Shown: positions 13,455 through 62,270 of the stretch, one piece after another
Layout: the number at the start of each line of letters is the position of its first letter
Position numbering within the stretch: position 1 is the stretch's first letter
DNA from: Octopus bimaculoides
Lineage: Eukaryota
Length of the DNA stretch: 64,000 bases
Direction of reading: 5' to 3'
Assembly (NCBI RefSeq): GCF_001194135.2
Contig: NC_068983.1
Coordinates: 61,224,934-61,288,933 of the forward strand
Position numbers and translations under genes: made by a program
The notes under the pieces: generated by a model
Databases searched by the model: none
Seen by the model: the letters and a program-made list of their open reading frames with translations, nothing else
Told to the model about the DNA's origin: nothing

Positions 13455-13550
13455 ATTCAGCCACAACATATTGTTCTAAAATTGAGGGTGGTGCCATGCA
13501 GGTGACTCTCAACAAGCTGTCAATTGATTATTATCCCTTCAATCCTGCAG
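13455..13550 (+). CDS. BLTP3B: BLTP3 coding exon (96 nt): SATTYCSKIEGGAMQVTLNKLSIDYYPFNPA
   Basis: tttccag| acceptor, |gtaatt donor; conserved GGAMQ...IDYYP. Confidence 0.93.
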
Positions 13551-19642: not shown

Positions 19643-20631
19643 GTAAGTAACCTTTACACTCACAGTTGTAATGTCTATTTGTTCTGCAACAGTTTATTGT
19701 AAAAACTGCCTTAGTTCACACATGGTTTTTTGGTGTTATTTTATTCTTTTACTATTTTGTCAGAGCTAGGTAAGGTAGCACTATGACCCCTTTTCAAGGT
19801 CCCCAAAACTAGTGAAAGAAAGGTACCTTAAAACTAGAAACCTGGGTTGAATACTTGCAAGAGTGTACTTTGCTAACGGTACCCATGGGCCAGGTGAAGG
19901 TGCTAAACTGGACAGCAGGTTAAATCTACCACACAAAAACAGAAATAGGCTTCTAACAAGCTTCCATATAGTTTCTATTTACAAGCCTTCAGTTATTCTG
20001 AGGCTATAGCTGAAAACAAATGCCTCAAAGTGTTGTGTAGTGACATTGAACCCGAAACCATGCAGTTGCAAAGTGAACTCCTTTACTATACAGCCATATT
20101 TATGACTGAACACAAACATGGACACGTGCAATTACAACTACTCACCGCCATACATATGAGTAAATATACTTGATCGTACTCAGACGTGCGTGCACACACA
20201 AACATACAGATACATCTACATACTGAGTAATGATGTCTTTCCAACGTCAGTAAATCAGTTATATGATTCGACCCTTTTGTTACCATAATTCTATTGATAT
20301 ATACTATCTTCTTTCCATTTATTTTTGAAAATAATGAAGAATTTGTTAAATAACTTTTTCAATTTAATTTGGTGTTTGGAATATAAATTAATATGGAAGA
20401 TGTGAATTTAGATCATTTTGACCTAGAGGAAAGCCAAGCAAATTCTATCATGTCCATTAATCTCCCTTATCAAGCCTTCATGAAATTTATTCACTATTTG
20501 GTAAGTAGAAGTTTATCCAGATCATAAATGAAAATAAAGAGGGAAATTCTGGTTTGTTCTGCTTCTCTATAACCAATCATTGAATCAGTTTTGTTTTATA
20601 TGGATTGATTTTCTTTTTGTCTATTTTTCAG

Positions 20632-20738
20632 TGCCACATGCTAATCTGTATGTATTGTTAAACCCTGTACAGCTGAGAGTCGACTATCTTACACTCCTCT
20701 GGCTTAACTATTTTGTGTTGCAGCTGTCCAAAAATCTG
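20632..20738 (+). CDS. BLTP3B: BLTP3 coding exon (107 nt): PHANLYVLLNPVQLRVDYLTLLWLNYFVLQLSKNL
   Basis: tttttcag| acceptor, |gttagt donor; NLY...DxxTLLWLN motif. Confidence 0.92.
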
Positions 20739-20766
20739 GTTAGTATTTATGTTAGCTCTTCTCTTT

Positions 20767-21687
20767 CATCATCATCATCATCATCATCATTTAACGTCCG
20801 CTTTCCATGCTAGCATGGGTTGGACGATTTGACTGAGGACTGGTGAACCAGATGGCTACACCAGGCTCCAATCTGATTTGGCAGAGTTTCTACAGCTGGA
20901 TGCCCTTCCTAACACCAACCACTCCGAGAGTGTAGTGGGTGCTTTTATGTGCCACCGGCACGAAAGCCAATCAGACGGTACTGGCCACGCTCAAAATGGT
21001 GTATTTTACGTGCCACCTGCACAAGAGCCAGTCCAGCGGCACTGGCAACAATCTCGCTCGAATGTGTTTACATGTACCACCAGCAAGATTTCGCTTTCGC
21101 TTGCCCCAACAGGTCTTTGCAAGCCGAGTTTAGTGTCCAATGAAGGAGACGACGTTGGCATGGGTGCCAGTCGTCGAATTTAGTTCGACTTCGATTTCAC
21201 TTGCCTCAACAGGTCTTCGCAAGCAGAGTTTAGTGTCCAACGAAGGAAAGGTATGCATAAGTGGGCTGGTTATACCACTGGCATAGGCCACAGGTTATGG
21301 TCTCACTTGGCTTGCCGGGTCTTCTCAAGCACAGCATATTTCCAAAGGTCTCGGTCAGAAGTCATCGCCTCGGTGAGNNNNNNNNNNGCATAGGCCACAG
21401 GTTATGGTCTCACTTGGCTTGCCGGGTCTTCTCAAGCACAGCATATTTCCAAAGGTCTCGGTCAGAAGTCATCGCCTCGGTGAGGCCCAATGTTCGAAGG
21501 TCGTGCCTCATCACCTCATCCTAGGTCTTCCTGGGCCTACCGCTTCCACAGGTTCCCTCAACTGCTAGGGTGTGGCACTTTTTCACACAGCTATCCTCAT
21601 CCATTCTCGCCACATGACCATACCAGTGCAATCGTCTCTCTTGCACACCACAACTGATGCTTCTTAGGTTCAACTTTTCTCTCAAGG
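20767..21687 (-). mobile_element. Young 5'-truncated RTE LINE (ORF C-terminus, 3' UTR, (GAT)n tail); contains gap N 21378-21387
   Basis: Reverse translation LREKLNLRSISCGVQERRLHWYGHVARMDEDSCVKKCHTLAVEGTCGSGRPRKT is the RTE RT C-terminal region; tail identical in type to the other copies. Confidence 0.9.
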
Positions 21688-21905
21688 AAAAATAGATGTT
21701 AACATGATGATGATGATGATGATGAATGTCCTCTAATAGTTTTGTATGTATTAAGTAGATGTTATCTATTTCTTCCTGTCTTCTCACTTTGTCTAGCTGA
21801 TCAGCAAGCATGGACAACTAAGACACCTTGCACTGTCTCTTGTAAATCAAAGATAACAACATTTGTGTATCTTACTAACAACTGTTTTTCACCTTTGTTT
21901 TGCAG

Positions 21906-21968
21906 AAAGAAAATACAGATGGACCTCGTGAACACATTGATATCAAATTTGAAGCTTTAATGCCGAAA
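21906..21968 (+). CDS. BLTP3B: BLTP3 coding exon (63 nt): KENTDGPREHIDIKFEALMPK
   Basis: TACTAAC branch site at ~21873, ttttgcag| acceptor, |gtaagt donor; resembles recalled human EHVDVRVDGLMLK. Confidence 0.88.
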
Positions 21969-23394
21969 GTAAGTTGACTTTGCTGTTGATACTACTACTA
22001 CTACAACTAGGAAACTTCTATGTGGTCATTCAACTTGGAGATAGTAGTCAAGTCTCCTTCAAATCTTGGAAAATGATAATTATTCTGGTTGGAATGCTTT
22101 TGATCATAGGTCTGCTTGATTAGGGCCAACAATTATTATCTTTATTGCTCCTAGTATTATTGCTGTACTTTCCATTATATATGTCAAAAAAACTTTATGG
22201 TTATAACATGAGATTCTGCACTTATTTTATGCAGTGGTATTGTAATGAGTTTCAATCTTGTCAAATTTTCAATGAAGATTTAAGTGCTATTCATTTCACT
22301 TCACTTTCGTTACTTCATAGACTTGAGAACAGCATCAAAGACACACAATCTGATTTCCTTTCGTCTCTTATTGTGAGGCATTGTGATCATCAAAAACTGG
22401 AATTTATCTATGGATGGCCTAATACCTACAGAAATGTAAACAGTTTCACTAGAAATTATAATATTTTTAAAACATAAATGATTCATTTGTGTTTGCAAAT
22501 AATAGTGTAACTTATTCATGTCACTCCTAAAGTGAAAGCATGTGGCCTAGTGGTTAGGGGCTGAGTTAACAATCATAAGTTCATGGGTTCAGTTCCTGGA
22601 CTGGGTGGTGCAGTGTGTCACTGAGTAAGACACATCATTTCACATTGCTCAAAGCTACTCAGCTGAACATGAGTACTAGTTGACTGCTGGTGCAGCCCTC
22701 TAGTTGCTCCAGCTATCACATCCTTGATATTTCACTGGGTCAAGTATGAGAGAATCGAAAGGATGTTTATGTCTGCTTATACCAATAACATGATATTTGT
22801 GTCGCTTGGGCCCCTGAAACATCTGTTCACCTTGCATATGTCAATAACATATAATTATCTGGACTACTTTGGTTCCCAAAACATATTTGGGTCTCTTTCA
22901 TTCCTGAAATTTATCAAAATCCATCAAGTTATTTACTTACTGGTGTTTGTTCTTTAGAATTCTGGTTGTCTTCTTGACTACTGAATCAACTATTGTAGAG
23001 TGTTCAGTTCCCACAAAAGTGAAATTTTTAGTTACATAATTAGATTCCTAAATTAATGAAGTACTTCTGTTTTGTTGAAAATGTTTTTATTATTGTAATA
23101 TTTGTAATGGTTAGAGGGAACAGCTAAATGCTGATAGTGAGAAATATTCAGTATCAGCATCCAGCTACTATTTCTAAAGACTAAATTTGTAAAACCTTTT
23201 AATAGGCTTATGGCCTCTTGATTCTCCATCTTTTCTCTTGTCACTGATGTATATTCATTGTTTTTTGCTAGTTGAATCTTTGTTGGGAGTGGTTGACCAT
23301 TAGGAACATTGCAGACATGAAACACCAGCAAACAGTTTTCTATCTAGATTCAAATATTAACTATTTAAAGCTATGAGAGAACCTTTATATGATC

Positions 23395-23581
23395 ATTCAG
23401 CCTGCAAATAATAGTAGCCAAATTCTCCTCAAATCACACCCTACAGTGTTAAAAGAAGGACACATTGAATTATGTAGTCCTGAATACACTGCCCATAGAA
23501 AATAAGAAGGAGTGATCACAGCTAGATTGTTCTTGACCATAGGTTTACATGATCAGGGCTAGCCTAGAGCTAAACAACAAA
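23395..23581 (+). repeat. Dispersed ~190-bp repeat family (CTAAACAACAAC-tailed)
   Basis: CCTGCAAATAATAGTAGCCAAATTCTCCTCAAATCACACCCTAC...GATCAGGGCTAGCCTAGAGCTAAACAACAA. Confidence 0.65.
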
Positions 23582-23781
23582 GGCTACTTAAATAACCTCC
23601 CACAATATCAACTATATAAATTATTGTTAGAGAAATAACATTGGATTAACATAATATGTGTGAAAGTAATGAATGTGTTAAGTGAAATACATTAGTAAAG
23701 AAGGGCTCTGGCTGGAGAGATCCTTCTCTTTACATGTTTTACTAACAACCAGTCTAACTCTTTATTTTTCTTTATCTCCAG

Positions 23782-24778
23782 CTATTAATCCCTGCTGAAA
23801 GTGGATCCTATCCACAAGTAGCTGAGCGACCAGATACTCTGTTAGTTCAAATCTCCAAAATGTCAGCAACCAATAAACAGAGTGAGGAAGACACCAGTCA
23901 TGAGAAACTATTACTGGCACTGGAAGAACAAAGCCAGTGCTGTCTACTTAAATCAACAGAGTTCCCAATGGATCAGAACGAACTTTTGGTGTGTCCACAA
24001 CATGTATGTAGTCATGTCTTAGAAAAGGACTGTCTTAATGCCTACATAGACTCATATGTGAAACAAGTGTTGACAAACTACAAGTTGTCATTGTCTGGCA
24101 CTAACACAACTACAAACGCAGCTGAAATAGCTGACAGGAGAAGATTGAAAACCAACAGTCTCAAGCTGGATGCTGCATATGATATCTGGAATGTACATAT
24201 TGATCAGATATGGATGGACTTCACCACACGCAAGTCTCGGCCTGTTCCTTTTCTAGAGTCTTTCCCAGTGACATTTTGGTTTTGGCGAACTCAGCCCTGT
24301 AAAAGTAGGGGGAAGAAGGAAGGAGAGAGTAGATTTGACCATAAAGGCAGTTCTAACTTGAATGGGAGTCAGGATTATAGTGACACTTCTGAATTAGCTG
24401 ATAGTGATAGTTCAACAACACTTTGTGATAATGATGGCCACACGGACATCTGTGCAATAGTATGTATCAAATCAAAAGTTCAAGTCCTAATCACACATTA
24501 CCAGTATTTGTTCATGCTACGGCTTGCTGAGTCTTTAACAACCTTTCAAAAACAACTAGATGCTGACACTGAATATTTCTCCGGAACATTGGCATCTTCA
24601 TCAATTTCTTTAACAACATTTGTGCAGGACATTGAAGTAGCGATGGTTTTCCGTAAACCATCTGAGAGTTCATTCCATAATGGAAACATGACTGAGGCTC
24701 ATAGCAGTACCATAAAAGGAAGTATACCAGAACTGTCGCTTCCTGACCGGCAAGCAGAATTGGATGGTTGGCCAAACA
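23782..24778 (+). CDS. BLTP3B: BLTP3 coding exon (997 nt): LLIPAESGSYPQVAERPDTLLVQISKMSATN...DGWPN
   Basis: tctccag| acceptor, |gtaagt donor; ORF 23860..24846 contains W-V-HIDQIW-DF, FLESFPVTFW and HYQYLFMLRL. Confidence 0.93.
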
Positions 24779-25146
24779 GTAAGTTAATGTGCACGACTGT
24801 CATTTGTTTGATCTTGCTTCCCTCCAGGGGGTACAAATATATATAATACCCTCTCACCTTTCCATATATACATCATCATCATCATACACACACACATCAA
24901 ACATCCTCTCACCTTCCCAAACACAATCCTTCCTTCTATAAACACCACTAATATATAATGTGTTATTTCTGTTCTTTTGCTTTCACTCATCTGTCAAGTT
25001 TCATAAATATTTTGTATTTGTTATCTATAATCAATGTAAGTCTAATTATAATCATTATAGATTTTATTAATTCTTCCTAAGAACATGTAATAATTTCCTG
25101 CTGTATTGTTTGTTGATCCATCAATGAATTTCTATGTTATTTGCAG

Positions 25147-25766
25147 ATGACATGAACAACTATGATGGCAGCTTAAGTTACATCTCAAAATCTTACAGTG
25201 ATTCTCGTTTAAATATCTCCAAGCATAGAAGTATGAATGGAGAGCTAATGGAGGGTTTGATCCATGAAGATAGCATGCAACCATTGAATACAGCATTAGA
25301 GAACAGTACTCCAAACATTAACCTCTGCAGTAGTGAAGGTGCATCAGAATCTGTAATGCCTATGTCACTCGTAACATATAGTGCAGCTTCAGACACTGTT
25401 TATTCAACAATAAGTTCCTTAAGCAGTTCAGATGCTAAAAGTGCTGGGCCAGCAGTTACATCACGCAAATCCAGTTTTAAAAGTGAAAAGAAAAAAGTTT
25501 TATCGACAGCTTGGTCAAATTTTACTGACAAGTTGAGGTCCATGAGTGATTTAAATGACGATTCTTTGCTTGGTACTGAAGACCTGGAACCAGGTCAGAC
25601 TGATTATTCTTCAGATGATGAGTCGTTTGAACATCTGTCATTAGAAGACGCTGAAGAACTTCCTGCATTTGAAAAAAAACAAACTCTTGATGCTCAGGGC
25701 TCTTTTGAAACTACAAGCCAAGACAGCAGTTTAGAAACTACATCAACAGCTCGGGAAAAGCAACTA
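25147..25766 (+). CDS. BLTP3B: BLTP3 coding exon (620 nt): acidic/Ser-rich, probably disordered region
   Basis: tttgcag| acceptor, |gtatgt donor, phase 1/0; ORF 25134..25856. Confidence 0.9.
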
Positions 25767-27295
25767 GTATGTGTTATTTATATTTTCTCCTTTTATGTGG
25801 TTAGCTTTGCAATAACTTCATATGAAAGTTTTCTTTCACTTATTTTTCCAATATGATGTGGCACAGTGTGTTTAAAGTGAAGATATATGACTATTGGGCA
25901 TGTGTCCATGCACTTACTACAGTTAATCATTTGTGTTTGTGGCAAAGGCACATAACTTTGCTTGCTTCAGTCTGCCTTGCTGGTAACAAGTTCTACTTTT
26001 ATTTCATAGTTGAGTTGTTAGAATTAAGAAAGACATGCAGCTGTAAAAACAATTAGACCAACAATATACAGATGTTCAAATTAAATAAAATAATCATTCT
26101 TTAAAAATCTGTTTAAAAGCTAGAGCACAAAACTAGTGATGTTGATGAAGTTAATGTTCTTTATGAGCTTCAGTTACTTGACAACTAGTTCAGAGAAACA
26201 GATGTTATTGCAGTAGTTATAGAAGAGGCTGGGAGGAAAATACAAAACATATGTGAGTCTATACCAGTAGTGTGTTGGTGAGTGTTTGTGTGTCAGTCTT
26301 CTCTTGAATGTGCTCTGTTCCAGATATGTGAGCAGTTGTTACAATATGAGTTTTATTAGAGTTTTGTAGATGGTCAGCAAATGATCAGAGGTTGAGGTAT
26401 TTCAAGCCCTAAAAAAGAAACCTAGAGTTTGTGATGTTTTTCTACAGATACCTAGCATGAGCATGTCAAAATAGATGTAAAACAGAGAAAATAAGTCATA
26501 ATGTGTGAAGATATACTGGAAGGAGAGAGTTCTGCCTGACTAACTATCAACATATCAGTTACAAAAATATCAGATTTTGTTATAGAGAAGAAGTTTCACG
26601 TATTAGTGGATGCCTGTTATAAATTACTCATCTGGAAATAGTTTATATTTTCTGTCACTTTCCTAAAGTATGCTAAATATTTATGTTGCATATTGTTTCT
26701 TCAAATGCTTACTCATTAATTACAAAATTTGTTTTTTTTTTTAATCCATAATTGGCCTACCACCAACATGATGTTTTGTGTATATTACGTTTCTGAATGA
26801 CTTTGTATGTTTCATTTTTAGACCCTATAAGTTACATCCATTTACACTGGCCCCATTGATCCACTTCTATCCCTATCACCAACTTGCTTCTCATCTTTAT
26901 CTCCAGCCAATGAAGGAACCTTTATTTAATCAGTTGACCTGCTAGAAATAGCAGTCAAATCTCTTACACTAGTATCATAAAAAAGAAAGGATACATTAGG
27001 TAATGTAGCTTGAGGTACACTATTATTGCAAACAAAAAAAAAAAACCCAAACGGGATAGTCTTGGCTTGACTGCCTTTGATTGTACATCTATTTGATGGC
27101 AGTTGAACATATCTCTAGCAAATCAATATTATTCACTATCATTATATGTCCTCACATTTGCAGCTATTTCAATAGCATATAATTTCAAGTCCTTTCTCAA
27201 TGCAAGCTCATATTGTGTAAAGTAAAAATGAAGCTACACAGTGAAGCAATAAGTTAAATTCAATCAAATCATTGCATACGTTTTTTTTTTTTCAG

Positions 27296-27452
27296 ATCAA
27301 TGTTTCAATCTTCCATTTGAGCCGAACTGAAGCATTTGTCCAGAACTTGAGAAGTGGTACTGTGTTACGTTGTCAATTACAAAATATTGATGTTGCTGAA
27401 TCAAGAGGTTTCAGCTGGGAAGGATTCCATCGCAAGTTTACCTCATCAAAAG
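27296..27452 (+). CDS. BLTP3B: BLTP3 coding exon (157 nt): INVSIFHLSRTEAFVQ...FHRKFTSSK
   Basis: Long T tract + cag| acceptor, |gtattt donor, phase 0/1. Confidence 0.9.
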
Positions 27453-27549
27453 GTATTTTTCGTATATTTTTGTAGTAAAATTAACATTGTTTCCTAAGGG
27501 TCCCTATTGTTCTATTCCATTAATGAAGTCAATAGCTTAAATGTATATC

Positions 27550-27923
27550 ACAGGCATGGCTGTATGGTTCAGAAACTTGCTTTGCAACCATGTAGTTTCT
27601 GGTTCAGTCCTACTGCCAGACATCTTTGGGCAAGTGTCTTCTACTATAGCCTCAGGCTGACCAATGCCTTGTGAAAGAATCTGGCTGATTGAAACTGTGT
27701 TTTTGTGTTTGTACTTGTCTCCCACCACTGCTTGACAGCCTGTGTTGGTTTGTTTATGCCCTCATAATTTAGCAACTTGGCGAAAGACAATGATAGAAAA
27801 AGTACCAGATTTAAAAGTAAAAAAAAAAAAAGTACTGGGGTCAATTTATTCAACTAAACCCTTCAAGACAGTGTCTTAATATGGCTACAATCCAATGACT
27901 GACACAAGTAAAAGATAAAAGAT
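27550..27923 (+). mobile_element. tRNA-derived SINE, family 1 (diverged)
   Basis: CAGGCATGGCTGTATGGTTCAG...GGTTCAGTCC...GGCAAGTGTCTTCTACTATAGCC...ACAAGTAAAAGATAAAAGAT. Confidence 0.8.
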
Positions 27924-28646
27924 CCATTTTCTAAAATGTAATTTGAGTAGCAGGTATATGAGTCAATGACATGCTAAATTACCAGCTGAAAGGTAACTTG
28001 TTCAAATCTTTGACCAGCATTGTTTTGTGTCTAAGGACAAGTCACTTAACTTCTAATTGGCTCATTGATTAGCCATCTGCTGTGATAGGTGATGGGTTGT
28101 TGGAACATGCACATGGCTTGTGTATTTGAGTTATTGATGTGAAGTCTGCAGTGCATAACTGTTCAGCTTATCAGTTTTCTCCTGTAGATAATCTATCTTT
28201 GAGGAGAAGATTACCAAGTCAAGTGTACACTCAAGTTCTAAATGTGAGGGAAAGTGTCCACATAATACCTCTGATGTAGTCTTACTGATGATCCATTCAT
28301 TGTTAATTAAGAAATAGATGTGGAGAGAATACAGCCTTGTCACAACTAGATTTCACTGATGTTTCATAATCTTGTGGGTTAAGTTTACAGAAGGTTAAGT
28401 TTACAGAAGGTTAAGTTTCCTAAATGTTTTCTGTAACATCTTCATTACCTAAATCATTATTATCTAACTTTGTCAACATTTTATACGTCTTCCTCTATCT
28501 CAGCTTACATTAATCAATATGTGGGACAGGTTCCTCTGTCTATCAATTAATAGGTAGCTGAATAGTTTTCTGTTTGTTATTTATTACTTTAAACACATTT
28601 CTCATCCAATTTGGCTGGTAAATCTGCAGTTGTTGTTTTGTATTAG

Positions 28647-28906
28647 GTTTACAGTATGAGACAAAATCAATGTCAACAGCCCAGTTCCCAGTACGACTAA
28701 AGTATATGATTGGTCCTGGTCTGGCTGAATTAAAGAATGATCTCATTGGACAAGAGCGGGGATTTTTACACATTGACTTGGCTGACATCAACCTGACATT
28801 CCAGATGTCAGCTCTTATGAATATAACTGATCTGATTGAGGACGAGCTCCCTCCTGTCTTCATGCCACTCTATATCAGCATCAAAGACCTGACACTGACA
28901 TTACAG
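28647..28906 (+). CDS. BLTP3B: BLTP3 coding exon (260 nt): LQYETKSMSTAQFPVRLKYMIGPG...EDELPPVFMPLYISIKDLTLTLQ
   Basis: tattag| acceptor, |gtaagg donor, phase 1/0; ORF 28670..28996. Confidence 0.9.
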
Positions 28907-29437
28907 GTAAGGCTTTTTGGACAGCTATTGAATAATTGTTTTATTTTACAGTTTCAAGCTGTTGTATCGGACACTGCTGCTATAGGCAGCTACTGAACAG
29001 ATAACTGACTGTTTTCAGGGGTATGGAATGTAAATATTAGGGTCAAGTTAGAGGTGCATGCCAGAAAACAGGGTTCAATAAAATCAGTACCAGAAAGTGA
29101 AATAACAAAGGCTTAATGCCTCTCTAAGTTGGGTAACAGACTTAATCTGTCACACGGTTTAACATCACTGCCCCGCCTTTAGTGAAGCTCGCTCTGTTTG
29201 CAAGTATTCAGGCCAGGCCTCCAGTTTGAGGATATATTCCTTCTTTATTCTCACGAGTTTCTGTCCTCTTTCTTGTTAACTCTCTCTCTCTCTCTCTCTC
29301 TGGTTGGCCAACTATGTACCCCCTAAGACACCTGTTTCTGTCTTTCTGTCACACTCTAACTTTTATCATCTGATGCAAAATTACCTCCTCCAATGTCCCC
29401 TCCCTTCTCAAAGATGCCTTATCTTACAAGTTACTTG

Positions 29438-32275: not shown

Positions 32276-32784
32276 GTGCTAGAGAGAGCGAATATTACAA
32301 AAGGATCTCAAAATCATCCTTGATTACCAAAAATTCATCAGGTGAAGACCAAAACACCTTAGAAGCAGCTTTATATGGTTCTGTTAGTACTTCTAGTCGA
32401 ATAATTGAACAGTTACATAATGAGAATGAAGAACTGGTATCTGTTAATAGAAAGCAAGCTGAAACTTTAGAGAATTATACAATGCTTATGGCAGAAGTTG
32501 CCAGTTTGAAGGATGAAAACCAGAAACTTAAGGAATCTTTAGATGAAAAGGTCTCTCAGATACAAGATTCTAATCAGAATTTCTCCTCAGAACATATAAC
32601 ATCATTAGAAACTGAAAATCTGAAGCTATTACAAAAGATTACTTACTTAGAAGAAGAAATACAAACATCTGTTAAAGAAAAGGACTCGTTACTAGCAACA
32701 ATGCACCTGCTTCAAGAAGAGTTGCTTTCATCAGAGCAACAACGCACCAGTTTCCAGCATCTACAAAGTCCTAATCAAGCATAA
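32276..32784 (+). CDS. BLTP3B: BLTP3 last coding exon (509 nt), C-terminal coiled coil, TAA stop
   Basis: ccaacag| acceptor; in frame with ORF 32320..32784; heptad-rich ending DSLLATMHLLQEELLSSEQQR. Confidence 0.92.
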
Positions 32785-42361: not shown

Positions 42362-42789
42362 TTTATGTTTTGTTTTTGATGCTGTTGACACTGCTGGATG
42401 GAACAGTACTGTCCAGGGGATGAAACCATAGCGATTTCTGTCTGGCAGCTGATAATGGGACTGTATAATTTCGTATGCTTTGTGAATTTTTTTTACATCT
42501 TGGGGTCTCCTTATTTTGAGTTGTCCTTCATTTTCATAAAGTTGAAAGTGTTTGTGGATTCATGGTGATTACTTATATATTAATATTGGTTGATTTATTT
42601 CATAGATAATCTTATTAGGCTTGGATAATGGTTTCTAGTTTTGGGAGGTTAGGTGGCGCATATATATATATATATATATATAGTAAAGCTTATTTGCCAA
42701 CATAATGTGGCAGTCCTAGTTGGGATGAATGTTACTGTTATTTGGCCCCAGGAAACATCGTCTCCAGCTGGCTATATGACACTATCTGT

Positions 42790-44555
42790 GTCCTTATATT
42801 TTCAAACTATGGGTAAGGAGCATAAATATAAATTCTCCTGGATAGGGAGTAGTGTAGGTATACTTTTGACAGAGAAGTGGATAGACAAGGTGATTGAGGT
42901 AGTCAGGGTATGTGATAGGATTATCAAGTTAAGAATAGTCTTGTATAATGTAACAGCAACATTTATCTCTGCATATTCTCCACATGCTGGATTCACTGCT
43001 GAACAGGACTGTTTCTATCAATCCATTCTGCAGACTACCTCAACAATGAAGTGTGCATGGAAATTTCAGCTTTGGCATTAGAAAAGAGAACAGAACAAGG
43101 CTTCTGGAGTTCTGTGATACAAATGATTTGCTGGTCTACAACACAAACTTCAGGAAACTAGCTGGCCATCTAATCACTTATCAGTTTGGTGGGCACTCCA
43201 GTCAGATTGACTACATTCTCACCAGAAACAGGGACAAAGAGATGCTCATAATTGCAAACTCCTTTCTCAGTGAGGAATGTATGACTCAACATAAATTAGT
43301 GGTTAGTAACTTCAGATTTAAGGCTAGAAAGACAGTGATGCAAACCAGTCTGGAAAAAGAAGCTATGAAAGCTCAAAGATTCATCAAACAGTCAGAGGTT
43401 TAGAGACATTCTGATTAAAGCATTTGATGAGAAAGAGTAGGAGGCTGTGGCGTTTAATGTAGAGGACAAATGGAAGTCCTTATGGGACAACCTTCTGAAG
43501 GCTGCATACCAAATTTGTGATTGTGGCAAAGTCTCAGCCAGATAGAGAGTGACTTGGTGGTGGAACAGTGAACTAGATAGGGCCATACAAGCAAAAAGAT
43601 AGGCTTGGAAAGATTGGAGAAATGGAGGCAACAAAGAACTATATCAGGTAGCCAAATGGGAAATCAGGTGTTAGGTTTATCTAGCAAAGGCAGAAGCAAA
43701 AAGGAAGAGGTTTCTCAATGTCTTACAGAGTGAAAATCAGAGACATGAGGTGTTTCAGATCGCTAGACAGTGTATCAGGGAGAATTGAGATGTAGTGGAA
43801 GAGACCTGTGTAGGATGGATAATGGTATGTTTGGACTCAGAGACACTGAAAAGAAACCGGCATGGAAGTACTATTATGAAAGGCTATTAAATGTGGAGAC
43901 TGAATGGGAGTCTAGGAAACTCTCTTACATGATCTGTTGTGCCTGGGGAGAGTCATTTTCTTTTTGTGCCTTATAATTTAACACACTCACTGGTAAAATT
44001 TCCACTTGCTCCTTTTTTTAAAAAATTTTTACTGCTTGTGTCCATAGCTTGCATTGGGTACACCACATGAACCCAACAGAAAGATTCACTATTTGTGTTG
44101 GCAGCAGTATGATAAATAAGACAATTAAGGATATGAAGACAGAGAAAGCCCCTGATCCATCAGTAGTTACCACTGAGATACTTAAAATAACTGACAGAGT
44201 AGGATATGGTCTAGTCACATTTATAGTGAATCAGGTTATTCAAGAAGGTGTCATCCCCAGTGATTGGTATCGCAGCTGCTACAAGGGTAAGGGAAATGCC
44301 TTAGAAGTAATTAAAGAGGTATCAAATAGCTGGACCAGGTTATGGAAGTTATGGAAAGGGTTATAGCTCAATTGATTAGGAACAGAATAAGAATAGATGA
44401 AATGCAGTTTAGCTTTCTGCTGAGAAGAAGCACTACTGATGCTATCTTTATAGTCAGACAACTGCAGAAGTATTTTGTTAAGGATAAACCATTGTACTTG
44501 GTGTTTGTTGACTTGGAGGAAGCCTTTGACAGAGTACCCTGCTGTGTGATTTGAA
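42790..44555 (+). mobile_element. Old RTE LINE: endonuclease and N-terminal RT, many stops and frameshifts
   Basis: VGILLTEKWIDKVIEVVRVCDRII, ISAYSPHAG, RLLEFCDTNDL, SQIDYIL, KAPDPS, CYKGKG, EMQFSF...STTDAIFIVRQLQ...FVDLEEAFDRVP. Confidence 0.9.
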
Positions 44556-44780
44556 TAGCATAAAAAAATAGTTGGTTATTTCTAGCAGTTCAAGTAACTG
44601 CAGAGAGGTTCCCTTATTGGCTTGTGAAAATAAAAAATATCATCTATAGTAGAGTTGTAATTATGCATAATAACAGTATATGCTGATGAAAAAGATAAGG
44701 AAGGGATGAGTGAGGAGCAGTCGTTATTCTTAATAAAGTATGTGAACATCAAGTACCTATATGCTATAGTTTTTTCCTGC

Positions 44781-45210
44781 ACTCAGACCTGGACACAACA
44801 CAGCAATGGACTACTGACTGGCAACTCAAGCTGGCTGTGGACCACCATACATTTTCGGAGGAAAACCCAGCTTTTACATACTCCCTCAACAACACCAATC
44901 TTAAGTCTGCTAGTGAATACAACCTGGGTATTATTGTCAACAGTGATTTGCATTGGACAAACCACGTCTCTAAAATTATCAAGAAGGCTGAGGTAGTCTT
45001 AGCATCATTCAGTAAGATCCCCTCCAGCTATCTATTTAAAGCTGTATATAGCTATGGTACATCAACACTTAGAGTTTGCATTGCTAGTTTGGAATCCTTA
45101 TCTTGCTCAGTATATCAATCTCCTGGAAACTGTTCAAAAACATGCAATCAGATGGATACCTACTGTCAGGCATTTACCATACTCTGAACATCTTGCTTCC
45201 CGGGGTAAGC
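44781..45210 (+). mobile_element. CR1/L2-like LINE, RT C-terminal fragment
   Basis: DLDTTQQWTTDWQLKLAVD, YNLGIIVNSDLHWTNHVSKIIKKA, HLEFALLVWNPYL...LETVQKHAIRWIP..RHLPYSE. Confidence 0.85.
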
Positions 45211-48010
45211 TTACAAAATCAAAAAATAACACAGCACCCATGACTTTTGGAAACATTTTTTCATGGACACCACAGCCTTCAAAACTCCCATGTCTCCTGA
45301 AATTTGCTTAAGGTACATACATGGTTCATGCACTTTTACCTACTTTTTCTTACAAATTGTAGTGCATCTGAGCACTGTATATAATAAGTTTATTATTATT
45401 ATACATGTGATCTGATTATTACTTGTAAATAGATTAATCTTCAACTGAAATATTTATTAATATAAGCATGTGATCATTTTATAATTTAGTAAGAAAATTA
45501 ACAACAAAAACAAACAAAAAGACAAAAACAAAATGATTCTTCCACTAAGGGTTATATTAATTAATGGTTATACAACAGAATTTCAAATCAAAATAGTATT
45601 AAACGAGAACATAAAGTAAATTACTGAAAGATTTAAGGCATATTACAGTTGAAGATGATTTCAACATTACCCAGTCTTTGATATGTAGACATTAACGACT
45701 TCAACAATATGTTTTTTCGATAAGCTTTATTTATTGACAGATCAAATCAATGGAAAAGAAATTAAAAAAAAATAAATATAAAAGGGTGGAAAGAAAGGAA
45801 GTAATTTTGCAGCAAAGTCTTATAATAACTAAGAATAGCTGGAATAGTTTCCTTCCAAATAGTAGAAACCATCAATGAACAACTGAAGTTCTCTGACAAT
45901 ACAGCAAGCTCAGTGAGTGTATCATATATATATNNNNNNNNNNNNNNNNNNNNNNNNNNNNNNNNNNNNNNNNNNNNNNNNNNNNNNNNNNNNNNNNNNN
46001 NNNNNNNNNNNNNNNNNNNNNNNNNNNNNNNNNNNNNNNNNNNNNNNNNNNNNNNNNNNNNNNNNNNNNNNNNNNTATATATATATATATCTCATGACCA
46101 GTGGGCAATGATGATTTCATTACTATAAATCAGTAACCAGGCAATTGATGAAATTATCAGTATCTGATGAAAGATTGACAATATTAAAAGGGAGAGGTAA
46201 ACATAAAGCAAGAAATAGAGGGACTTTGGGGGAATTTAAGTAACATGTGTGCTGTTAGTAATTACAAAGAAATTCAATTCAATATATATATTTACAGGTA
46301 AGGTACATAAATATACCAAGGAGTGAAAGACAATAAGTATGGTAGACAGTTAAATTAGTAGAAAAAAAGACCAAAAAAAAAAAAACCTAAACAAAAAAGG
46401 ATTTTGTCAGAAACGATACTGATACTTGGTGGTTAACAGATATAGGAAGTCATCTACTGCTTATGCATAGTCAGTTTGGAATGAACCTTTCATGTATATT
46501 CTGACAACATAAACAAGTAATAAAAAGCTACAGCCAGTTGGAATGTATTTTTAAATAATTACTGTCAATAATGGAAAAGTTGTGGAAACAGTATGTAATG
46601 ATAGCTGTAATGACATGAGTAAAGAGATACTGCTTTGATAGTAGTAGTATATTAGTCACAGCCTTTTTACTGAACAACTCAGTCAACACAGCTCTTTATA
46701 TAGTCTTCTGGCGGTTATATCTCCTGAACCATGTTTAGATGATGAAAGGTGGGTGGGTGGGCAGGCAGGCGGGAGGGGACTTATGAAGTACATATAAACA
46801 CACATTTAACACAGTAAACCAACAAAATAAACATTGTAAAAAGATAGGTTAATACCAGTTTCAGTCACTGCATAGGTTAATAGTCAATCTGAAGGTAATT
46901 GTGATCTTGCTGGCACTTACCTACATTGTTGAATCTACAAACTGATGGAAAATTGAATATTTGTATTTAAGCACAAGTGTAACACATTTTATACAAAATA
47001 TATTAAACATTATCAGTATTATTTCAAAGAAAGCAAGTAGAACTGTATATTCCATCATCATATTAAAAAAAAAAGTTAGTGAGGGAGTTTGAGGGTGGAG
47101 AAAGAAATAAAACTTTTGACTCAAGAGTAGACTGCTAGCTAAAACAAAATTACTTCCCATGGGAGAAATGCATTAATTTTCATTGTATTTATATTGAGAG
47201 AAGGAACATAACACAAGATGAAACATTGGCACTTATAAATACCTCAATACTTGGATTAAAGACACCAAAATGCAGCATTCTAGTCAATGGTATAACTTGG
47301 GTATTAGAGAAGAAAAATTCAATTTCTGGAAACTTAGAGTTTAAGGCCATGCTAGAACTGAATCAAATGAAAATTTAAAGGACATACTAAAATATCTGCA
47401 TAGCCATGAAGGAAATTTTAGTTAAACATTTACCAATACAACAATCAAAAAATAACATCCTTAAGATAATGTTTCGTTATCTAATTTAGTGCTGTCATGC
47501 CTACGTGTACGAACGTACACACACACACACAAACAAACATAAATGAATGGAAAGAGCCCTCTGTACACGAAGCAGATTACACAATTATTGGAAAACAGTT
47601 AATTCCATTGTTGCTCAAAGTGCAAACAAACAAATGCATGAAGTATACACCTGTGATGCTTCAGATCATATTGTGGATTAATGCACAATATATATATACG
47701 CACATGCACACATATGACAACATTAGTTCAGTTTACTAAACAAAATAAAGGGCTTGAAACATTTAGTGCTAAGTTAAACTGTTTATCGAATATAATCTCT
47801 ACCACACTATAATAGTGTTTTAGATCAGAGTTAGACCTTGACTAGAGGATAAAAATAAGAGACAAATTAGTTTTCAAATATAGTTAGAAGCCAAGATAAT
47901 GAAGGCTAAAGAGAGTTAAAGTCTAGTGTATGTCGGTTTTATGTCCTTATAGCAGAAATGGAGTGGGGGAACGAAATGATAGAATAAATGTAAATTAAAT
48001 AAAAATGAAA

Positions 48011-54219: not shown

Positions 54220-54525
54220 TTAGTGAGCAGTAGTTACTTCATTAGTACTCTTACCTAGGTTAGTCAAAGCTACAGCTGGTGAAGGGCAAGGAGGAGAACA
54301 GCGAGGGCTAGAAGTGTTTGTTCTAGGGGAGCCTTTAGCTGAGGATTGTAAAATATTACGTATAACTGAGCTATTATTGCTGTTACTAATGTTGCTACTA
54401 CCATTGTTGTTGCTGTAGTCCTTGTTGAAACATTCTAATGAATGTACTTTTGTCAACTTTCCATTCTCTATCCCAGCAGCTACATAAGAGAAGACACACA
54501 AAACTGCATAACAGATCTGGTCAGC
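54220..54525 (-). CDS. MADD: MADD (DENN/MADD, Rab3 GEF) canonical last coding exon: ADQICYAVLCVFSYVAAG plus Ser/Asn/Pro-rich tail
   Basis: ttttcatttcag| phase-0 acceptor. With the upstream exon it reads HKFKSSM-ADQICYAVLCVFSYVAAG, matching recalled human MADD [24 protein letters not shown]. Confidence 0.88.
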   Translation of the reverse strand, partial: ADQICYAVLCVFSYVAAGIENGKLTKVHSLECFNKDYSNNNGSSNISNSNNSSVIRNILQSSAKGSPRTNTSSPRCSPPCPSPAVALTNLGKSTNEVTTAH

Positions 54526-57795: not shown

Positions 57796-57839
57796 NNNNN
57801 NNNNNNNNNNNNNNNNNNNNNNNNNNNNNNNNNNNNNNN

Positions 57840-57891
<52 letters not shown>
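57712..57891. repeat. (TA)n(TAGA)n, gap (N 57796-57839), (GA)n microsatellite block
   Basis: Seen directly in the sequence. Confidence 0.95.
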
Positions 57892-57894
<3 letters not shown>

Positions 57895-57948
57895 AGTTTA
57901 ATAAGTTTTCAGTATTCAAATGAAAAAGTTACTGCACAAAAGCCAGTG

Positions 57949-58059
57949 TCAAGTTAAGTATGTCCTACTCTTTATACGATAGGTGGATTTCTTTGAGCTT
58001 GAGCTCATTGCCATATGTTTCGCAAAGACACGGTGAACCATTAAAACCATCTGATTGGC
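57949..58059 (-). CDS. MADD: Candidate alternative MADD last exon: ANQMVLMVHRVFAKHMAMSSSSKKSTYRIKSRTYLT*
   Basis: aatctttctttatctttag| phase-0 acceptor, 36 codons to TGA, ATTAAA at 57902-57897; the start aligns with the canonical exon (A-[ND]-Q-[MI]-x3-V-x2-V-F-[AS]). Confidence 0.55.
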   Translation of the reverse strand, partial: ANQMVLMVHRVFAKHMAMSSSSKKSTYRIKSRTYLT

Positions 58060-60889
58060 CTAAAGATAAAGAAAGATTACGTTTCACAACAATTTTATGT
58101 ACAAAGATAATCTGAATTGATTCAATACCGTATTTATTCATGCATACAATGCACATTTTTTAATCAAATTTTTAAAACTGGAAACCTGTTTTTCCTTTCA
58201 TTAAAGATTTTCATTTATGCAATTGAAGCCCCATGAAATTAGATACAAAATATGAAATGTAGTTGTTTAAAATGCTTTTCACTTCCTGAAAACTTTAAGT
58301 GTTGTTTCAAATTCATTAAGATTCTGATTTTATGAAGTTTTCTTTTTGAAAATTTTCAAAAGGTGGGATAGAATAAAAATTAGCATGGCTTATAAAGAAC
58401 AGTGGAAATGAATTTTTGCATAATTGTAATCTCTTATTTAAGAGAGTGAAGTTTGGTTTTAAATACAACTAACAGAGCTACCTTTTTATACCAGGTATAT
58501 TATCTTAGTAAAAAACAAATGGGAGTGATTTGAATATCCTATTTCTAACATGCCGAGTTATTTAATGAAAGTCTTGCTTGTAAGATCATAGAAAAATAGA
58601 TGCATACTTAAAATAGTAAGGTGTGATTAGAGAGATTTAACTGTTCTTTGTTAAATAAACCAAAAGCAGTCCAAAAGGGATTTCTGTTAGAGTGACACCG
58701 TTTTTAATGTTTATAGGATATAAACATATACGTCAGTTACAATTGTTTTATATATAGTAACACATAAAGGATTCAACTTTAGGAAACAGTTTTCAATTCA
58801 GATTGTGTTGATAAATTTGTATGAATATTCTTGAATTTGTACTCATTTACAGATTTCATTATTGTTGTTCTTTAGCCCTAAGTCAGTCACAAAATAAGAT
58901 AATTTTCTGCAAAGAGCTTTAAATACATTTATTAATAATATTGAATGTGTAATTTCCACAATAGTAGCTTTACAGTATCGGCATAATTTTACAGCTTACA
59001 CAAGTAAAGTTCAAATGTTACTTCCAAATTTGTCTTCGTTAAAATACATGAACTCTTTGTATTGCATTTTCTACAGCCTTTATATATATATATATTTTCA
59101 AATTTTTTTCATACATCATAATACTCAAGAAGAGTCTGTGCATATTGTACATGAGAGATATTTTTCCGAGCTTTCATTCCCCATAATTAGGTTTGTGCAT
59201 TACACAGGAATAAATACAGAATTCATCATACTATACCTGATAAAGTTACAATGATATTATAAACAAAAGGTTACCATTGCCATTAATCTAACTTACAAAT
59301 TTGATAAAGTCACCTAAAATCTAATTTTTATATTATCAAGTACTTTTTCTTATTTTCATGGTAATTTACAGCAATTCTATTATATTGAGAGGCATTTTCA
59401 GTGAGGGATTTATTTCCAGGATAGTTATTAACATTTTTCCAGTAGTTACATTGACACACATATATTAATATGTAATTTTATAACTTTGTGAGTTTTAAGT
59501 AGATATAAAGACATTGTTAATGATGTTTACTAACACAAAAACTGTTCTTTGACATTCCGAGAGTGTAATGATAATAAAAAGCAACTGATCTTGGCACAAA
59601 TGTACTAGTTAAGGAAATTTGAGAAAAACAAATGGTTCTTTAATTGCAATCAAGTACTAGAATCATATACTAAAAGAAAAAATTATATATATATATATAT
59701 ATATATACGCACACACACACACATATATATTCCCCTGTGTATGTGTGTGTGTACACATACTATGACTAAAATAAAAGAAACAACATTGGAGTCTATATCA
59801 ATAACAGAAATCTGAACACAGTGAACAAAAATAAACAACATAATATAAATACACACTAGGTAAGAAAGGAGAGAAGGAAAATGCAATAATTCTTCCTGCA
59901 TAACTCAGTATAACTTGTAAAGGAATTTGCCAACATAATCAAAACTCTAGCAAATGGAATGCTTCTGGTATTGATAAACAGAAACCAGAATTAACAATGT
60001 ACGATAAAGAGATGATGAAAACCAACTCTAACCCGATAAGAATAGGAATTTTCCAGCCTTTATTTCCACTATTTTTTTCTCTCTATCTCTGACTGTATTA
60101 CAAAGGATGTTAAGTGAAAACAACAGTTAAAATGTTGAGAAAAAATTAAAAAATATCTCCTCTATATGGTTGATTTAAAAATATATACAAGACACAAACA
60201 AGGCATTCAATAGAGTTCAGTTTTGAGGGGTATAAAATTATTTCTCAGTCACCATTAATCCCAGGTCTGCTCTGATCCTGGTTGTTAGCACTTGTCAAGG
60301 AACCCATTAATTAGTCAATTAGTAGAAGCTGGTTCTGTGGTTTAGGCACATAGGACTCAAAAGAGGACTGATTCTTAGACATGTAACACAGAGGCCTACC
60401 AGTGTGCAGATTTGCCCTGGTGGCATGTAAACAAGTCACCCATATCTAAGCTAGAGAGAGCAGGAAACTAGCAAAGTTAACTAAGCTGGTAAGAGGCAAT
60501 GGGAAATTACTGCTGTATCTTTCCCAAGAAACAACACAAATCTTCAAACTTTGGCATGTTAGCATGATGTATGAAAAGTGAGAGAAGGGTCTATATCTAT
60601 TGGAGGACCTGTTAAAAAGTAGATCCAACAGTAATATCAAAATGGGTACAGGATTAGACAAATATTTCAAAGTTACTCTAAAAAGAAGAACACTAATTTT
60701 GAACTTGAAACATCAAGATAATTAAACCAGAGAAGTAGGGCAGAACCAGTCATTCAGAGTTGATGCTTAAGCCCAGGTAAATCTTCATGAGGCAAGCTCA
60801 AGATGAAAGAGGTTTCAACCATAGACATTATGACTTGTTTTTCAAACACAGTGCATCCAGTACAACATTATTGAATAAGTCCTTCCTAT

Positions 60890-62223: not shown

Positions 62224-62270
62224 CATGCTGGATTTAAACTTATGAGGAATCACTTGCCTAGTTTTGGGAT
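62224..62270 (-). CDS. MADD: MADD penultimate coding exon (47 nt): (D)PKTRQVIPHKFKSSM
   Basis: Very long polypyrimidine tract + ttacag| acceptor, |gtaagt donor, phase 1/0; resembles recalled human VPEIKEVVSHKYKTPM. Upstream exons lie beyond the window. Confidence 0.88.

What the first reader, a model, noticed from the sequence alone, without database searches (positions are those of the whole stretch)
57897..58085. Apparent duplicated, alternative last exon of MADD
Between the 47-nt exon (phase 0 end) and the canonical last exon lies a second phase-0 acceptor. It opens 36 codons starting ANQMVLMVHRVFAKH, against ADQICYAVLCVFSYV in the canonical exon: identical A, Q, V, V, F at the same offsets from the splice site, plus N/D, M/I and A/S. 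It has its own TGA (57949) and ATTAAA 46 nt later. This is the signature of tandem exon duplication giving mutually exclusive C-termini. It would swap the conserved terminal helix of the Rab3/Rab27 GEF and replace the long 3' UTR with a short one. The ORF track shows only a different frame here. I do not know whether it has been described.
Basis: partly seen in the sequence, partly recalled or inferred. Interest (0 to 1): 0.72.

Follow-up and report, generated by a model that had tools for sequence, protein, structure and literature searches.

The report
Conserved alternative C-terminal exon of MADD
The short reading frame in the last intron of this animal's MADD (Rab3 exchange factor) gene is a real alternative exon, found from nematodes to insects and molluscs, that gives the protein a different final helix; other species' gene models already carry it, but I found no study of it.

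Summary
On the minus strand, ...ctttatctttag|GCC (58059) opens ANQMVLMVHRVFAKHMAMSSSSKKSTYRIKSRTYLT, with TGA at 57951-57949 and ATTAAA at 57902-57897.

The exon is nevertheless real. MADD proteins and transcripts of Artemia, Centruroides, Lygus, Timema, Elysia, Mya, Pristionchus, Rotaria and marine copepods end, after the same ...K[YF]KSxM junction, in a second kind of C-terminus, [AS]xx[ILM]x[LIM]x[VLF]-H-R-[VI][IFV]. The same species also have canonical ADQICY isoforms.

Scored with a profile of those foreign peptides, the window peptide ranks first of 59,319 open positions in the window (HMMER E = 0.004).

The Eurytemora genome has the same order: penultimate exon, alternative exon, canonical exon. 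An ant and an unidentified animal contig show it in part.

AlphaFold models put the start of the last PH-like domain's C-terminal helix at the first residue of either exon.

Unresolved: whether the exon is terminal (own poly(A) site) or a stop-carrying cassette, since both forms are seen elsewhere; whether it arose by duplication; and whether this species uses it, because no RNA data were available.

The parts
62224..62270 (-). Constitutive 47-nt penultimate coding exon of MADD, (x)DPKTRQVIPHKFKSSM, ending in phase 0 before gtaagt. It encodes the last strand of the C-terminal PH-like domain.
   Evidence: Sequence. With the canonical exon it matches Pfam PF25328 PH_MADD at 34 bits against a cut-off of 27. 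The same junction ...K[YF]KSxM| occurs in all homologues.
58060..58085 (-). 3' splice site region of the alternative exon: pyrimidine-rich tract tctttctttatcttt plus AG.
   Evidence: An AG in phase 0 preceded by a tract that is pyrimidine-rich in three of the four loci sits directly before the homologous exon in L001, L002 (Eurytemora) and L004 (Harpegnathos).
57952..58059 (-). Alternative exon coding sequence, 36 codons: ANQMVLMVHRVFAKHMAMSSSSKKSTYRIKSRTYLT. The first ~18 residues are the alternative C-terminal helix with the invariant His-Arg.
   Evidence: Rank 1 of 59,319 open positions against a foreign alternative-type profile. HMM E = 0.0044 over the whole window. H and R are invariant in the 12-sequence alignment A3. 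G+C is 39.6% against 25-27% in the flanks.
57949..57951 (-). TGA stop codon of the alternative reading frame.
57927..57935 (-). Candidate weak 5' splice site GCA|GTAACT (GT at 57932-57931). If used, the exon would be a 127-nt stop-carrying cassette (58059..57933).
   Evidence: A cassette arrangement is seen in transcript contig L006. A comparable AAA|GTAATT lies 2 nt after the stop in Eurytemora. Use of this site is not shown.
57897..57902 (-). ATTAAA, a possible poly(A) signal 46 nt after the stop. It is followed by (CT)n at 57891-57840 and a 44-N assembly gap at 57796-57839.
   Evidence: A hexamer of this kind is expected by chance about once per 500 nt in DNA this A+T-rich (own estimate). 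Its function is not shown.
54220..54525 (-). Canonical distal exon: ADQICYAVLCVFSYVAAG helix plus a 83-residue low-complexity tail and TAA.
   Evidence: ADQICYAVLCVFSY[VI]AAG is nearly invariant from nematodes to molluscs.

Best explanation
The frame at 58059-57952 (minus strand) is the orthologue, in this probably molluscan genome, of an old alternative exon of MADD (also called Rab3GEP, Rab3-GEF or AEX-3). It lies between the 47-nt penultimate exon and the canonical ADQICY exon.

How it works: when the penultimate exon's donor (62224|gt) is spliced to the proximal acceptor at 58059 instead of the distal one at 54525, translation continues in phase 0 into 36 codons and stops at the exon's own TGA. 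The protein keeps all seven strands of its last PH-like domain (Pfam PF25328). Its closing alpha-helix changes from the near-invariant ADQICYAVLCVFSYVAAG plus a long low-complexity tail to ANQMVLMVHRVFAKHMAM plus a short basic tail.

The two helix types share residues at positions 1, 4, 7/8, 11, 12, 13 and 17. By helical periodicity I infer that this face packs on the beta-sandwich. They differ on the other face, which is C5-Y6-L9-C10-Y14 in the canonical type and x-L-H9-R10-[VI] in the alternative type, with His-Arg invariant. The switch therefore most likely keeps the fold and re-specifies a surface that contacts another MADD domain or a partner.

Shown: the sequence anatomy; homology to alternative isoforms elsewhere; the conserved genomic order, complete in Eurytemora and partial in two further loci; and the predicted helix start at the exon boundary.

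Inferred: that the exon is used in this species, which face of the helix is buried, and any functional consequence.

Undecided: whether the mRNA ends at a proximal poly(A) site or carries the exon as a stop-containing cassette. The protein is the same in both cases.
For: 1. The gene is MADD. The penultimate plus canonical peptide hits PF25328 PH_MADD above its cut-off, and the alternative junction peptide hits the same region at E = 3.4e-4. There are 32 MADD fragments as homologues.

2. Alternative-type C-termini follow the identical junction in other animals: Timema monikensis P0068, the copepod-like P0055 and P0176, and P0069. They also occur in Artemia franciscana isoforms X1 and X2, Centruroides sculpturatus X3, Lygus hesperus A0A0A9Y2W5, Elysia chlorotica RUS85082.1, Mya arenaria WAR01175.1, Pristionchus entomophagus GMT06973.1 and Rotaria magnacalcarata CAF5173020.1. 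Artemia, Centruroides, Lygus and one unnamed insect transcript cluster also have canonical ADQICY isoforms; for Timema the canonical forms come from sister species.

3. The window peptide ranks first of 59,319 positions against a profile that excludes it. HMM E = 0.0044. H and R are invariant in the 12-sequence alignment A3.

4. The genomic layout recurs after an AG in phase 0. Eurytemora L002 has penultimate 16150, alternative 16281 and canonical 17481. L001 has alternative 1274 and canonical 6351. Harpegnathos L004 has penultimate 18453 and alternative 18743.

5. The exon's G+C content is exon-like.

6. In AlphaFold2 models the terminal helix starts at the first residue of the alternative exon (P0055, helix 202-220) and of the canonical exon (P0034, helix 227-253). 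The alternative model matches tandem-PH proteins in the PDB.

7. The two helix families are similar only in register.
Against: There is no transcript, junction or 3'-end evidence from this species. Its MADD is not in the searched protein collections.

The window peptide departs from the family consensus after position 13: AKHM where the others have [VI]xxx. Only the first ~13 residues carry the signal.

The alternative junction peptide is below Pfam's gathering score (21.2 against 27 bits).

The exon is absent from the corresponding intron of Homarus and Branchiostoma, so it can be lost. A conserved-looking relic that is no longer spliced cannot be excluded.

The buried and exposed faces are assigned from helical periodicity, not from coordinates.
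Confidence: 0.85

Rival explanations
1. Chance open frame. An AG followed by 36 open codons in an A+T-rich intron happens to resemble the canonical exon. There is no exon.
For: Similarity to this species' canonical exon is expected 0.24-0.57 times per intron by chance. DNA identity in the first 45 nt is 22/45, unremarkable after correcting for about 480 AG sites (my own count). ATTAAA is common in such DNA.
Against: The peptide ranks first of 59,319 positions against an independent profile of alternative C-termini from other phyla, and sits in exactly the right intron, strand, phase and register. H-R is invariant. Its G+C is exon-like. A homologous exon occupies the same genomic position in Eurytemora, and alternative-like exons sit upstream of the canonical exon in L001 and just downstream of the penultimate exon in Harpegnathos.
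Confidence: 0.03
2. The exon is a stop-carrying internal cassette, not a terminal exon. It is spliced in between the 47-nt exon and the canonical exon, for example through GCA|GTAACT at 57932. The canonical exon then becomes 3' UTR, so the transcript may also be subject to nonsense-mediated decay. This rivals the reader's reading of the mRNA architecture, not the protein outcome.
For: Metatranscriptome contig L006 reads penultimate | alternative exon (30 codons, TAA, 21 nt) | ADQICY canonical exon. The Mya arenaria model P0135 continues from the alternative exon into the canonical exon out of frame. GT sites lie shortly after the stop in the window and in Eurytemora.
Against: The window's candidate donor is weak and lacks the +5 G. 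An insect transcript (L007) runs at least 85 nt past the alternative stop without the canonical exon. ATTAAA lies 46 nt after the stop. The Mya model may be a predictor artefact.
Confidence: 0.4
3. A relic. The exon was functional in an ancestor and still looks conserved, but this lineage no longer splices it.
For: The exon is missing from the equivalent intron of Homarus and Branchiostoma, so loss does happen. The window peptide diverges from the consensus after residue 13.
Against: The frame is open for 36 codons where about 5% of AG sites would be (own estimate from the base composition). The acceptor, phase, invariant H-R and hydrophobic pattern are intact, and G+C is elevated exactly over the frame.
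Confidence: 0.1

Closest known systems
Alternative-C-terminus MADD isoforms annotated or assembled in other protostomes: Artemia franciscana XP_065577246.1 (isoform X2) and X1, Centruroides sculpturatus XP_023229824.1 (X3), Lygus hesperus A0A0A9Y2W5, Timema monikensis (P0068), Elysia chlorotica RUS85082.1, Pristionchus entomophagus GMT06973.1
   Same: They share the junction after ...K[YF]KSxM, the phase, and the motif [AS]xx[ILM]x[LIM]x[VLF]HR[VI][IFV]. A stop follows within roughly 25-70 codons in the complete examples. Artemia, Centruroides and Lygus also have ADQICY isoforms.
   Different: The window peptide has AKHM after HRVF where the others have [ST][VI]xx. Its tail (SSSSKKSTYRIKSRTYLT) is unrelated to theirs. 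No transcript is available for this species.
Human IG20/MADD alternative splicing of 'exon 34', which distinguishes the neuronal and neuroendocrine isoforms KIAA0358 and IG20-SV4
   Same: It is an alternative exon near the 3' end of the coding region of the same gene. The literature reports alternative splicing of exons 13, 16, 21, 26 and 34 (PMC12603207) and neuron-restricted isoforms (PMC3994957). My recollection, not verified here, is that the event changes the C-terminus.
   Different: Positional and sequence correspondence was not tested. No vertebrate or amphioxus alternative-type (HR) C-terminus appeared in the profile search, and the amphioxus intron has none.
Tandemly duplicated alternative exons that swap one structural element, for example SNAP-25 exons 5a and 5b (from general knowledge)
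   Same: The two exons are adjacent, are entered in the same phase, and encode alternative versions of the same helix. Their similarity is specific to the shared register.
   Different: The exons differ greatly in length (36 against 101 codons). The proximal one carries a stop. At the RNA level both can be present in one transcript (L006). Common descent is not demonstrated.

Membership tests
MADD / Rab3GEP gene, C-terminal PH-like domain (Pfam PF25328 PH_MADD) | The penultimate plus terminal exon peptide matches the C-terminal third of the PH_MADD profile above the gathering score. | tested here: met
   The canonical junction peptide scores 34 bits against a cut-off of 27, at profile positions 61-92 of 92. 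There are 32 MADD homologues at 63-83% identity over the conserved part.
MADD / Rab3GEP gene, C-terminal PH-like domain (Pfam PF25328 PH_MADD) | The alternative junction peptide also matches the profile above the gathering score. | tested here: inconclusive
   It scores 21.2 bits, E = 3.4e-4, at positions 61-90. This is below the 27-bit cut-off, and the shared 16 residues contribute much of the score.
Alternative-type ('HR helix') C-terminal exon of protostome MADD | Located in the intron between the 47-nt penultimate exon and the ADQICY exon, on the same strand. | tested here: met
   Window order on the minus strand is 62224 > 58059 > 54525. Eurytemora L002 shows the same three-exon order; L001 has alternative then canonical, and L004 penultimate then alternative.
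Alternative-type ('HR helix') C-terminal exon of protostome MADD | An AG acceptor directly before the first codon, in phase 0. | tested here: met
   The acceptor is tttag|GCC. The in-frame TAG of the acceptor bounds the stop-to-stop frame exactly at 58059.
Alternative-type ('HR helix') C-terminal exon of protostome MADD | Motif [AS]-x-x-[ILM]-x-[LIM]-x-[VLF]-H-R-[VI]-[IFV], in register from the first residue. | tested here: met
   ANQMVLMVHRVF fits every position. It ranks first of 59,319, with HMM E = 0.0044, and H and R are invariant.
Alternative-type ('HR helix') C-terminal exon of protostome MADD | The exon is included in mature mRNA of the species. | not testable with these tools
   No sequence of this species is in the protein or transcript collections.
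Tandem-duplicated, mutually exclusive exons | Significant similarity between the two exons that implies common descent. | tested here: inconclusive
   Within this species the similarity is not significant. At family level the in-register score is +6.8, every shifted register is negative, and permutation p = 4.4e-4. Shared structural constraint would explain this equally well.
Tandem-duplicated, mutually exclusive exons | The two exons are never present in the same mRNA. | tested here: not met
   Homologous transcript contig L006 carries both. Only the first is translated. This is another species, so the window itself is untested.
Alternative last exon with intronic polyadenylation | A poly(A) signal and cleavage site are used downstream of the exon's stop, and no donor site is used. 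| tested here: inconclusive
   ATTAAA lies 46 nt after the stop, but it is followed by (CT)n and an assembly gap. A weak GCA|GTAACT lies at 57932. Homologues show both architectures.

The most novel reading that the evidence does not exclude
MADD has carried a second, alternative closing helix for its C-terminal PH-like domain since before the split of ecdysozoans and spiralians. That helix is marked by an invariant His-Arg, and no paper in the searched library describes it. It could act as an isoform switch that re-specifies an interdomain or partner surface, for example Rab3-GTP or kinesin-3 binding or autoinhibition of the exchange factor, possibly in a tissue-specific way. The proximal exon's stop and possible poly(A) site would add a change of 3' UTR.
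Probability: 0.4. Interest if true: 0.6.

Novelty: new member of a known kind. Interest (0 to 1): 0.45.

Why it matters
MADD is the exchange factor for Rab3 and Rab27. It links synaptic-vesicle precursors to kinesin-3 and is mutated in human neurodevelopmental and endocrine disease.

The canonical terminal helix is one of the most conserved stretches of the protein. ADQICYAVLCVFSY is nearly invariant from nematodes to molluscs.

An equally old alternative helix with its own invariant His-Arg implies a second, selected state of the C-terminal domain. Functional work on Rab3GEP, AEX-3 and Rab3-GEF has not addressed it, as far as the searched library shows.

For this genome, the practical result is an exon and a protein isoform that a standard annotation could miss. 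The frame has no ATG-initiated ORF longer than 33 codons.

Tried and rejected
1. A word-index protein search with the alternative junction peptide found no candidate. This is uninformative, because even the constitutive 16 residues found nothing and the species is absent from the collection.

2. Solved-structure sequence search: only chance hits to CYP17A1 through the low-complexity tail.

3. tblastn of the window's alternative peptide alone against L001 gave noise. The homologous exon there was found only later, with the family profile.

4. Genomic look-ups for Nucella (P0002), Zootermopsis (P0039) and Nippostrongylus (P0037) were not on record.

5. Literature. Searches for MADD alternative last exon, exon 34, KIAA0358, IG20-SV4 and aex-3 isoforms found no description of this C-terminus. 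Li et al. 2008 (PMC2760438) is not held. The Drosophila Rab3-GEF paper and the 2025 JBC paper do not discuss C-terminal isoforms.

6. The ATTAAA and the 36-codon length were rejected as evidence in their own right. Both are common in 70% A+T DNA.

7. A chimera of a foreign PH domain with the window helix was not submitted for structure prediction.
Full report
**What is in the sequence**

- The 47-nt exon occupies 62270..62224. It reads (x)DPKTRQVIPHKFKSSM and ends in phase 0 before gtaagt.
- About 4.2 kb downstream in the intron, tctttctttatctttag|GCC opens a 36-codon frame at 58059: ANQMVLMVHRVFAKHMAMSSSSKKSTYRIKSRTYLT.
- The stop TGA is at 57951..57949 and ATTAAA at 57902..57897. A (CT)n run (57891-57840) and a 44-N assembly gap (57796-57839) follow.
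- The canonical exon begins at 54525 (ADQICYAVLCVFSYVAAGIENGKL...) and stops at 54222..54220.
- Joined to the 47-nt exon, the canonical peptide matches the end of Pfam PF25328, 'MADD C-terminal PH-like domain', at 34 bits against a cut-off of 27. The alternative junction peptide matches the same region at 21.2 bits. The gene is therefore MADD. Only its last two or three exons lie in the window.

Not by itself.
- I scored every AG-preceded open site against the first 12 or 15 residues of the canonical exon. The candidate is the best of 138 (or 111) sites in the intron.
- The window-wide frequency of equal or better scores is 6/3,463 (or 15/2,914). That predicts 0.24-0.57 such sites per intron.
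- A profile of 28 canonical exons from other animals makes the candidate second of 3,463 non-canonical sites. That is about 0.08 after correcting for the intron.
- The ATTAAA and the open length are both unremarkable in DNA that is about 70% A+T.

**What decided it**

The first search, with the alternative junction peptide, found nothing. Even the constitutive 16 residues found nothing, so this species is simply not in the collection.

The canonical peptide retrieved MADD fragments in which ADQICYAVLCVFSY[VI]AAG is almost invariant from nematodes to arthropods and molluscs.

A profile search built from those fragments returned some sequences with a different continuation after the same ...K[YF]KSxM junction. 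They do not continue with ADQICY. They also do not begin with V, as intron read-through would (GTn). They show a third kind of sequence:
- Timema monikensis: ANECILSLHRVISVVVARRM...
- A copepod-like metatranscriptome protein (P0055): AVKIAISLHRVISVLLAQ...
- A marine eukaryote transcript (P0069): ENFIALAFHRIISVQTIL...
- The window, for comparison: ANQMVLMVHRVFAKHMAM

An exhaustive HMMER search with these four aligned found the same kind of C-terminus in more species:

| Species | Record | Alternative C-terminus |
|---|---|---|
| Artemia franciscana | isoforms X1 and X2 | SHSIALSVHRVFSV... |
| Centruroides sculpturatus | isoform X3 | AGLLFLAVHRVIAV... |
| Lygus hesperus | A0A0A9Y2W5 | GEDLVLSVHRVISI... 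|
| Elysia chlorotica | RUS85082.1 | AYTIGLLFHRIISV... |
| Mya arenaria | WAR01175.1 | AETIPMTVHRIITV... |
| Pristionchus entomophagus | GMT06973.1 | ASAIAWALHRVFSI... |
| Rotaria magnacalcarata | CAF5173020.1 | ANKILLAFHRVVSI... |

In Artemia, Centruroides, Lygus and an unnamed insect transcript cluster, the same species also has canonical ADQICY isoforms. This is therefore a genuine isoform pair. It is spread over Ecdysozoa and Spiralia.

**Significance for the window**
- A profile made only from three foreign alternative peptides ranks the window peptide first of 59,319 open 12-mers in all frames of both strands. It scores 26.0 against 22.7 for the runner-up. Among AG-anchored sites the scores are 26 against 14.
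- An HMM of 14 foreign alternative peptides, searched against all 3,469 stop-to-stop frames of the window, puts this frame first with E = 0.0044.
- The hit also lies on the right strand, in the right intron (6% of the search space), and in register from the first codon after an AG.
- His9 and Arg10 are invariant in all 12 aligned alternative sequences, the window's included.
- G+C over the frame is 39.6%, the same as the canonical coding sequence (40.2%). The flanks are 25-27%.

**Genomic layout elsewhere**

| Locus | Penultimate exon ends | Alternative exon starts | Canonical exon starts |
|---|---|---|---|
| Eurytemora carolleeae (L002) | 16150 | 16281, tttttag\|ATQIALSLHRVFTILTSQKMQTMLTLRK* | 17481 |
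| Unidentified animal contig from a metagenome (L001) | not found | 1274, AKLIVFQFHRVVSIQTAK... | 6351 |
| Harpegnathos saltator (L004) | 18453 | 18743, AEEAVRCMHRIFSVAFTL... | not in the locus |

The corresponding introns of Homarus americanus (716 nt) and Branchiostoma belcheri (870 nt) contain nothing of the kind. No deuterostome alternative-type sequence appeared in the profile search. Vertebrate introns were not examined.

**What the exon encodes**
- AlphaFold2 models show two consecutive PH-like domains, both for the natural alternative isoform fragment (P0055, aligned with alternative-type sequences) and for a canonical fragment (P0034).
- In each model the closing helix of the second domain begins at the first residue encoded by the respective exon. 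The alternative helix is 202-220, with pLDDT 83 then 71. The canonical helix is 227-253, with pLDDT 93 then 82.
- The alternative model's best PDB matches are tandem-PH proteins: FACT Spt16M and Pob3M, Rtt106, centaurin-alpha1, and the IRS-1 and Dok7 PH-PTB regions.
- The two exons therefore supply alternative versions of one structural element.
- Family consensus sequences are ANQIALSVHRVISVQLAQ (alternative) and ADQICYAVLCVFSYVAAG (canonical). They agree only in register. The summed column score is +6.8, every shift from -6 to +6 is negative, and column permutation gives p = 4.4e-4.
- Agreement falls at positions 1, 4, 7/8, 11, 12, 13 and 17. The difference falls at positions 5, 6, 9, 10 and 14.
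- By helical periodicity these are two faces. I infer that the shared face packs on the beta-sandwich and that the other face is the isoform-specific surface.
- The in-register similarity fits an ancient exon duplication. It fits shared structural constraint equally well, and I cannot separate the two.

**mRNA architecture**

- The metatranscriptome contig that encodes P0055 (L006) contains, in order, the penultimate exon, the alternative exon (30 codons, TAA, 21 more nt) and then the canonical ADQICY exon. There the exon is an internal cassette with a stop.
- The Mya arenaria model runs from the alternative exon into the canonical exon out of frame.
- In contrast, an insect transcript (L007, Logan SRR14212515) continues for at least 85 nt after the alternative stop with no canonical exon.
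- In the window the only GT sites after the stop are TTT|GTGCAG (57937) and GCA|GTAACT (57932). Neither matches the donor consensus at -1 (G), and GTAACT also lacks the +5 G. ATTAAA follows 29 nt after the second site.
- Both architectures give the same protein. They differ in the 3' UTR and in possible exposure to nonsense-mediated decay.
- I put roughly 0.4 on cassette and 0.5 on terminal exon. The remainder is 'not used'.

**Comparison with what is known**
- The alternative C-terminus already sits in public protein records of other species (RefSeq isoforms, transcriptome-derived UniProt entries). The kind is therefore known to databases.
- In the searchable library I found no paper that describes it.
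- For human IG20/MADD, the literature reports alternative splicing of exons 13, 16, 21, 26 and 34 (PMC12603207). It also reports neuron- and neuroendocrine-restricted isoforms KIAA0358 and IG20-SV4 (PMC3994957).
- Whether 'exon 34' corresponds to this exon was not testable here. The key paper is not held.

**Verdict**

It is a new member of a known kind. It is of moderate interest because the isoform pair is ancient, sharply conserved and apparently unstudied. Use in this species, the 3'-end architecture and the function all remain to be shown.

Noticed in passing
window 19222-28996 (+), possibly to ~32800: Several long open frames on the plus strand match Pfam PF24917 (bridge-like lipid transfer protein 3A/B, UHRF1BP1/SHIP164-like) at successive profile positions: 413-514, 677-891 and 1223-1292. 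This is a large multi-exon gene convergent with MADD. A coiled-coil frame at 32320-32784 may or may not belong to it.
   Followed up: partly
window 4003-4933 (-): A Mos1/mariner-type transposase remnant. It has the HTH_48 domain and a partial DDE domain, split over two overlapping frames, so it is frameshifted.
   Followed up: partly
window 54246-54262 (-), inside the canonical exon's reading frame: CTAG|GTAAGA at 54254 is a good donor-like site 32 nt before the canonical stop. The 'last' exon might be spliced further in some transcripts. Not examined.
   Followed up: no
window 57796-57839 and 57840-57891; also N runs at 1634-2019, 6910-7032, 21378-21387 and 45934-46075: Assembly gaps are bordered by microsatellites: (CT)n and (TCTA)n next to the alternative exon. 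The sequence directly downstream of the putative poly(A) signal is therefore not continuous.
   Followed up: no
L006 (JGI 3300018929 metatranscriptome contig), nt ~640-790: Here the alternative exon is an in-frame 114-nt cassette (30 codons, TAA, 21 nt) followed by the canonical exon. The 21 nt before ADQICY (gcagcatcccaactttttcaa) look like a pyrimidine tract ending in CAA rather than CAG.
   Followed up: partly
L005 (Homarus americanus) 12796-13512; L003 (Branchiostoma belcheri) 16929-17798: The last intron is short and has no alternative-type exon. This suggests loss in decapods, and absence or strong divergence in amphioxus.
   Followed up: partly
P0076 (Drosophila simulans GD24817): After ...RKYQSSM this gene model continues with FGGGGGGGGGG... 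This is neither canonical, nor alternative-type, nor GT read-through, so it is a third kind of continuation. It could be a gene-model artefact or another exon.
   Followed up: no
window 42653-45187 (+): A run of open frames of 96-142 codons, of which the three scanned (42653-43081, 43053-43403, 44049-44366) have no Pfam match at E <= 0.01. It may be a decayed retroelement. Not identified.
   Followed up: partly
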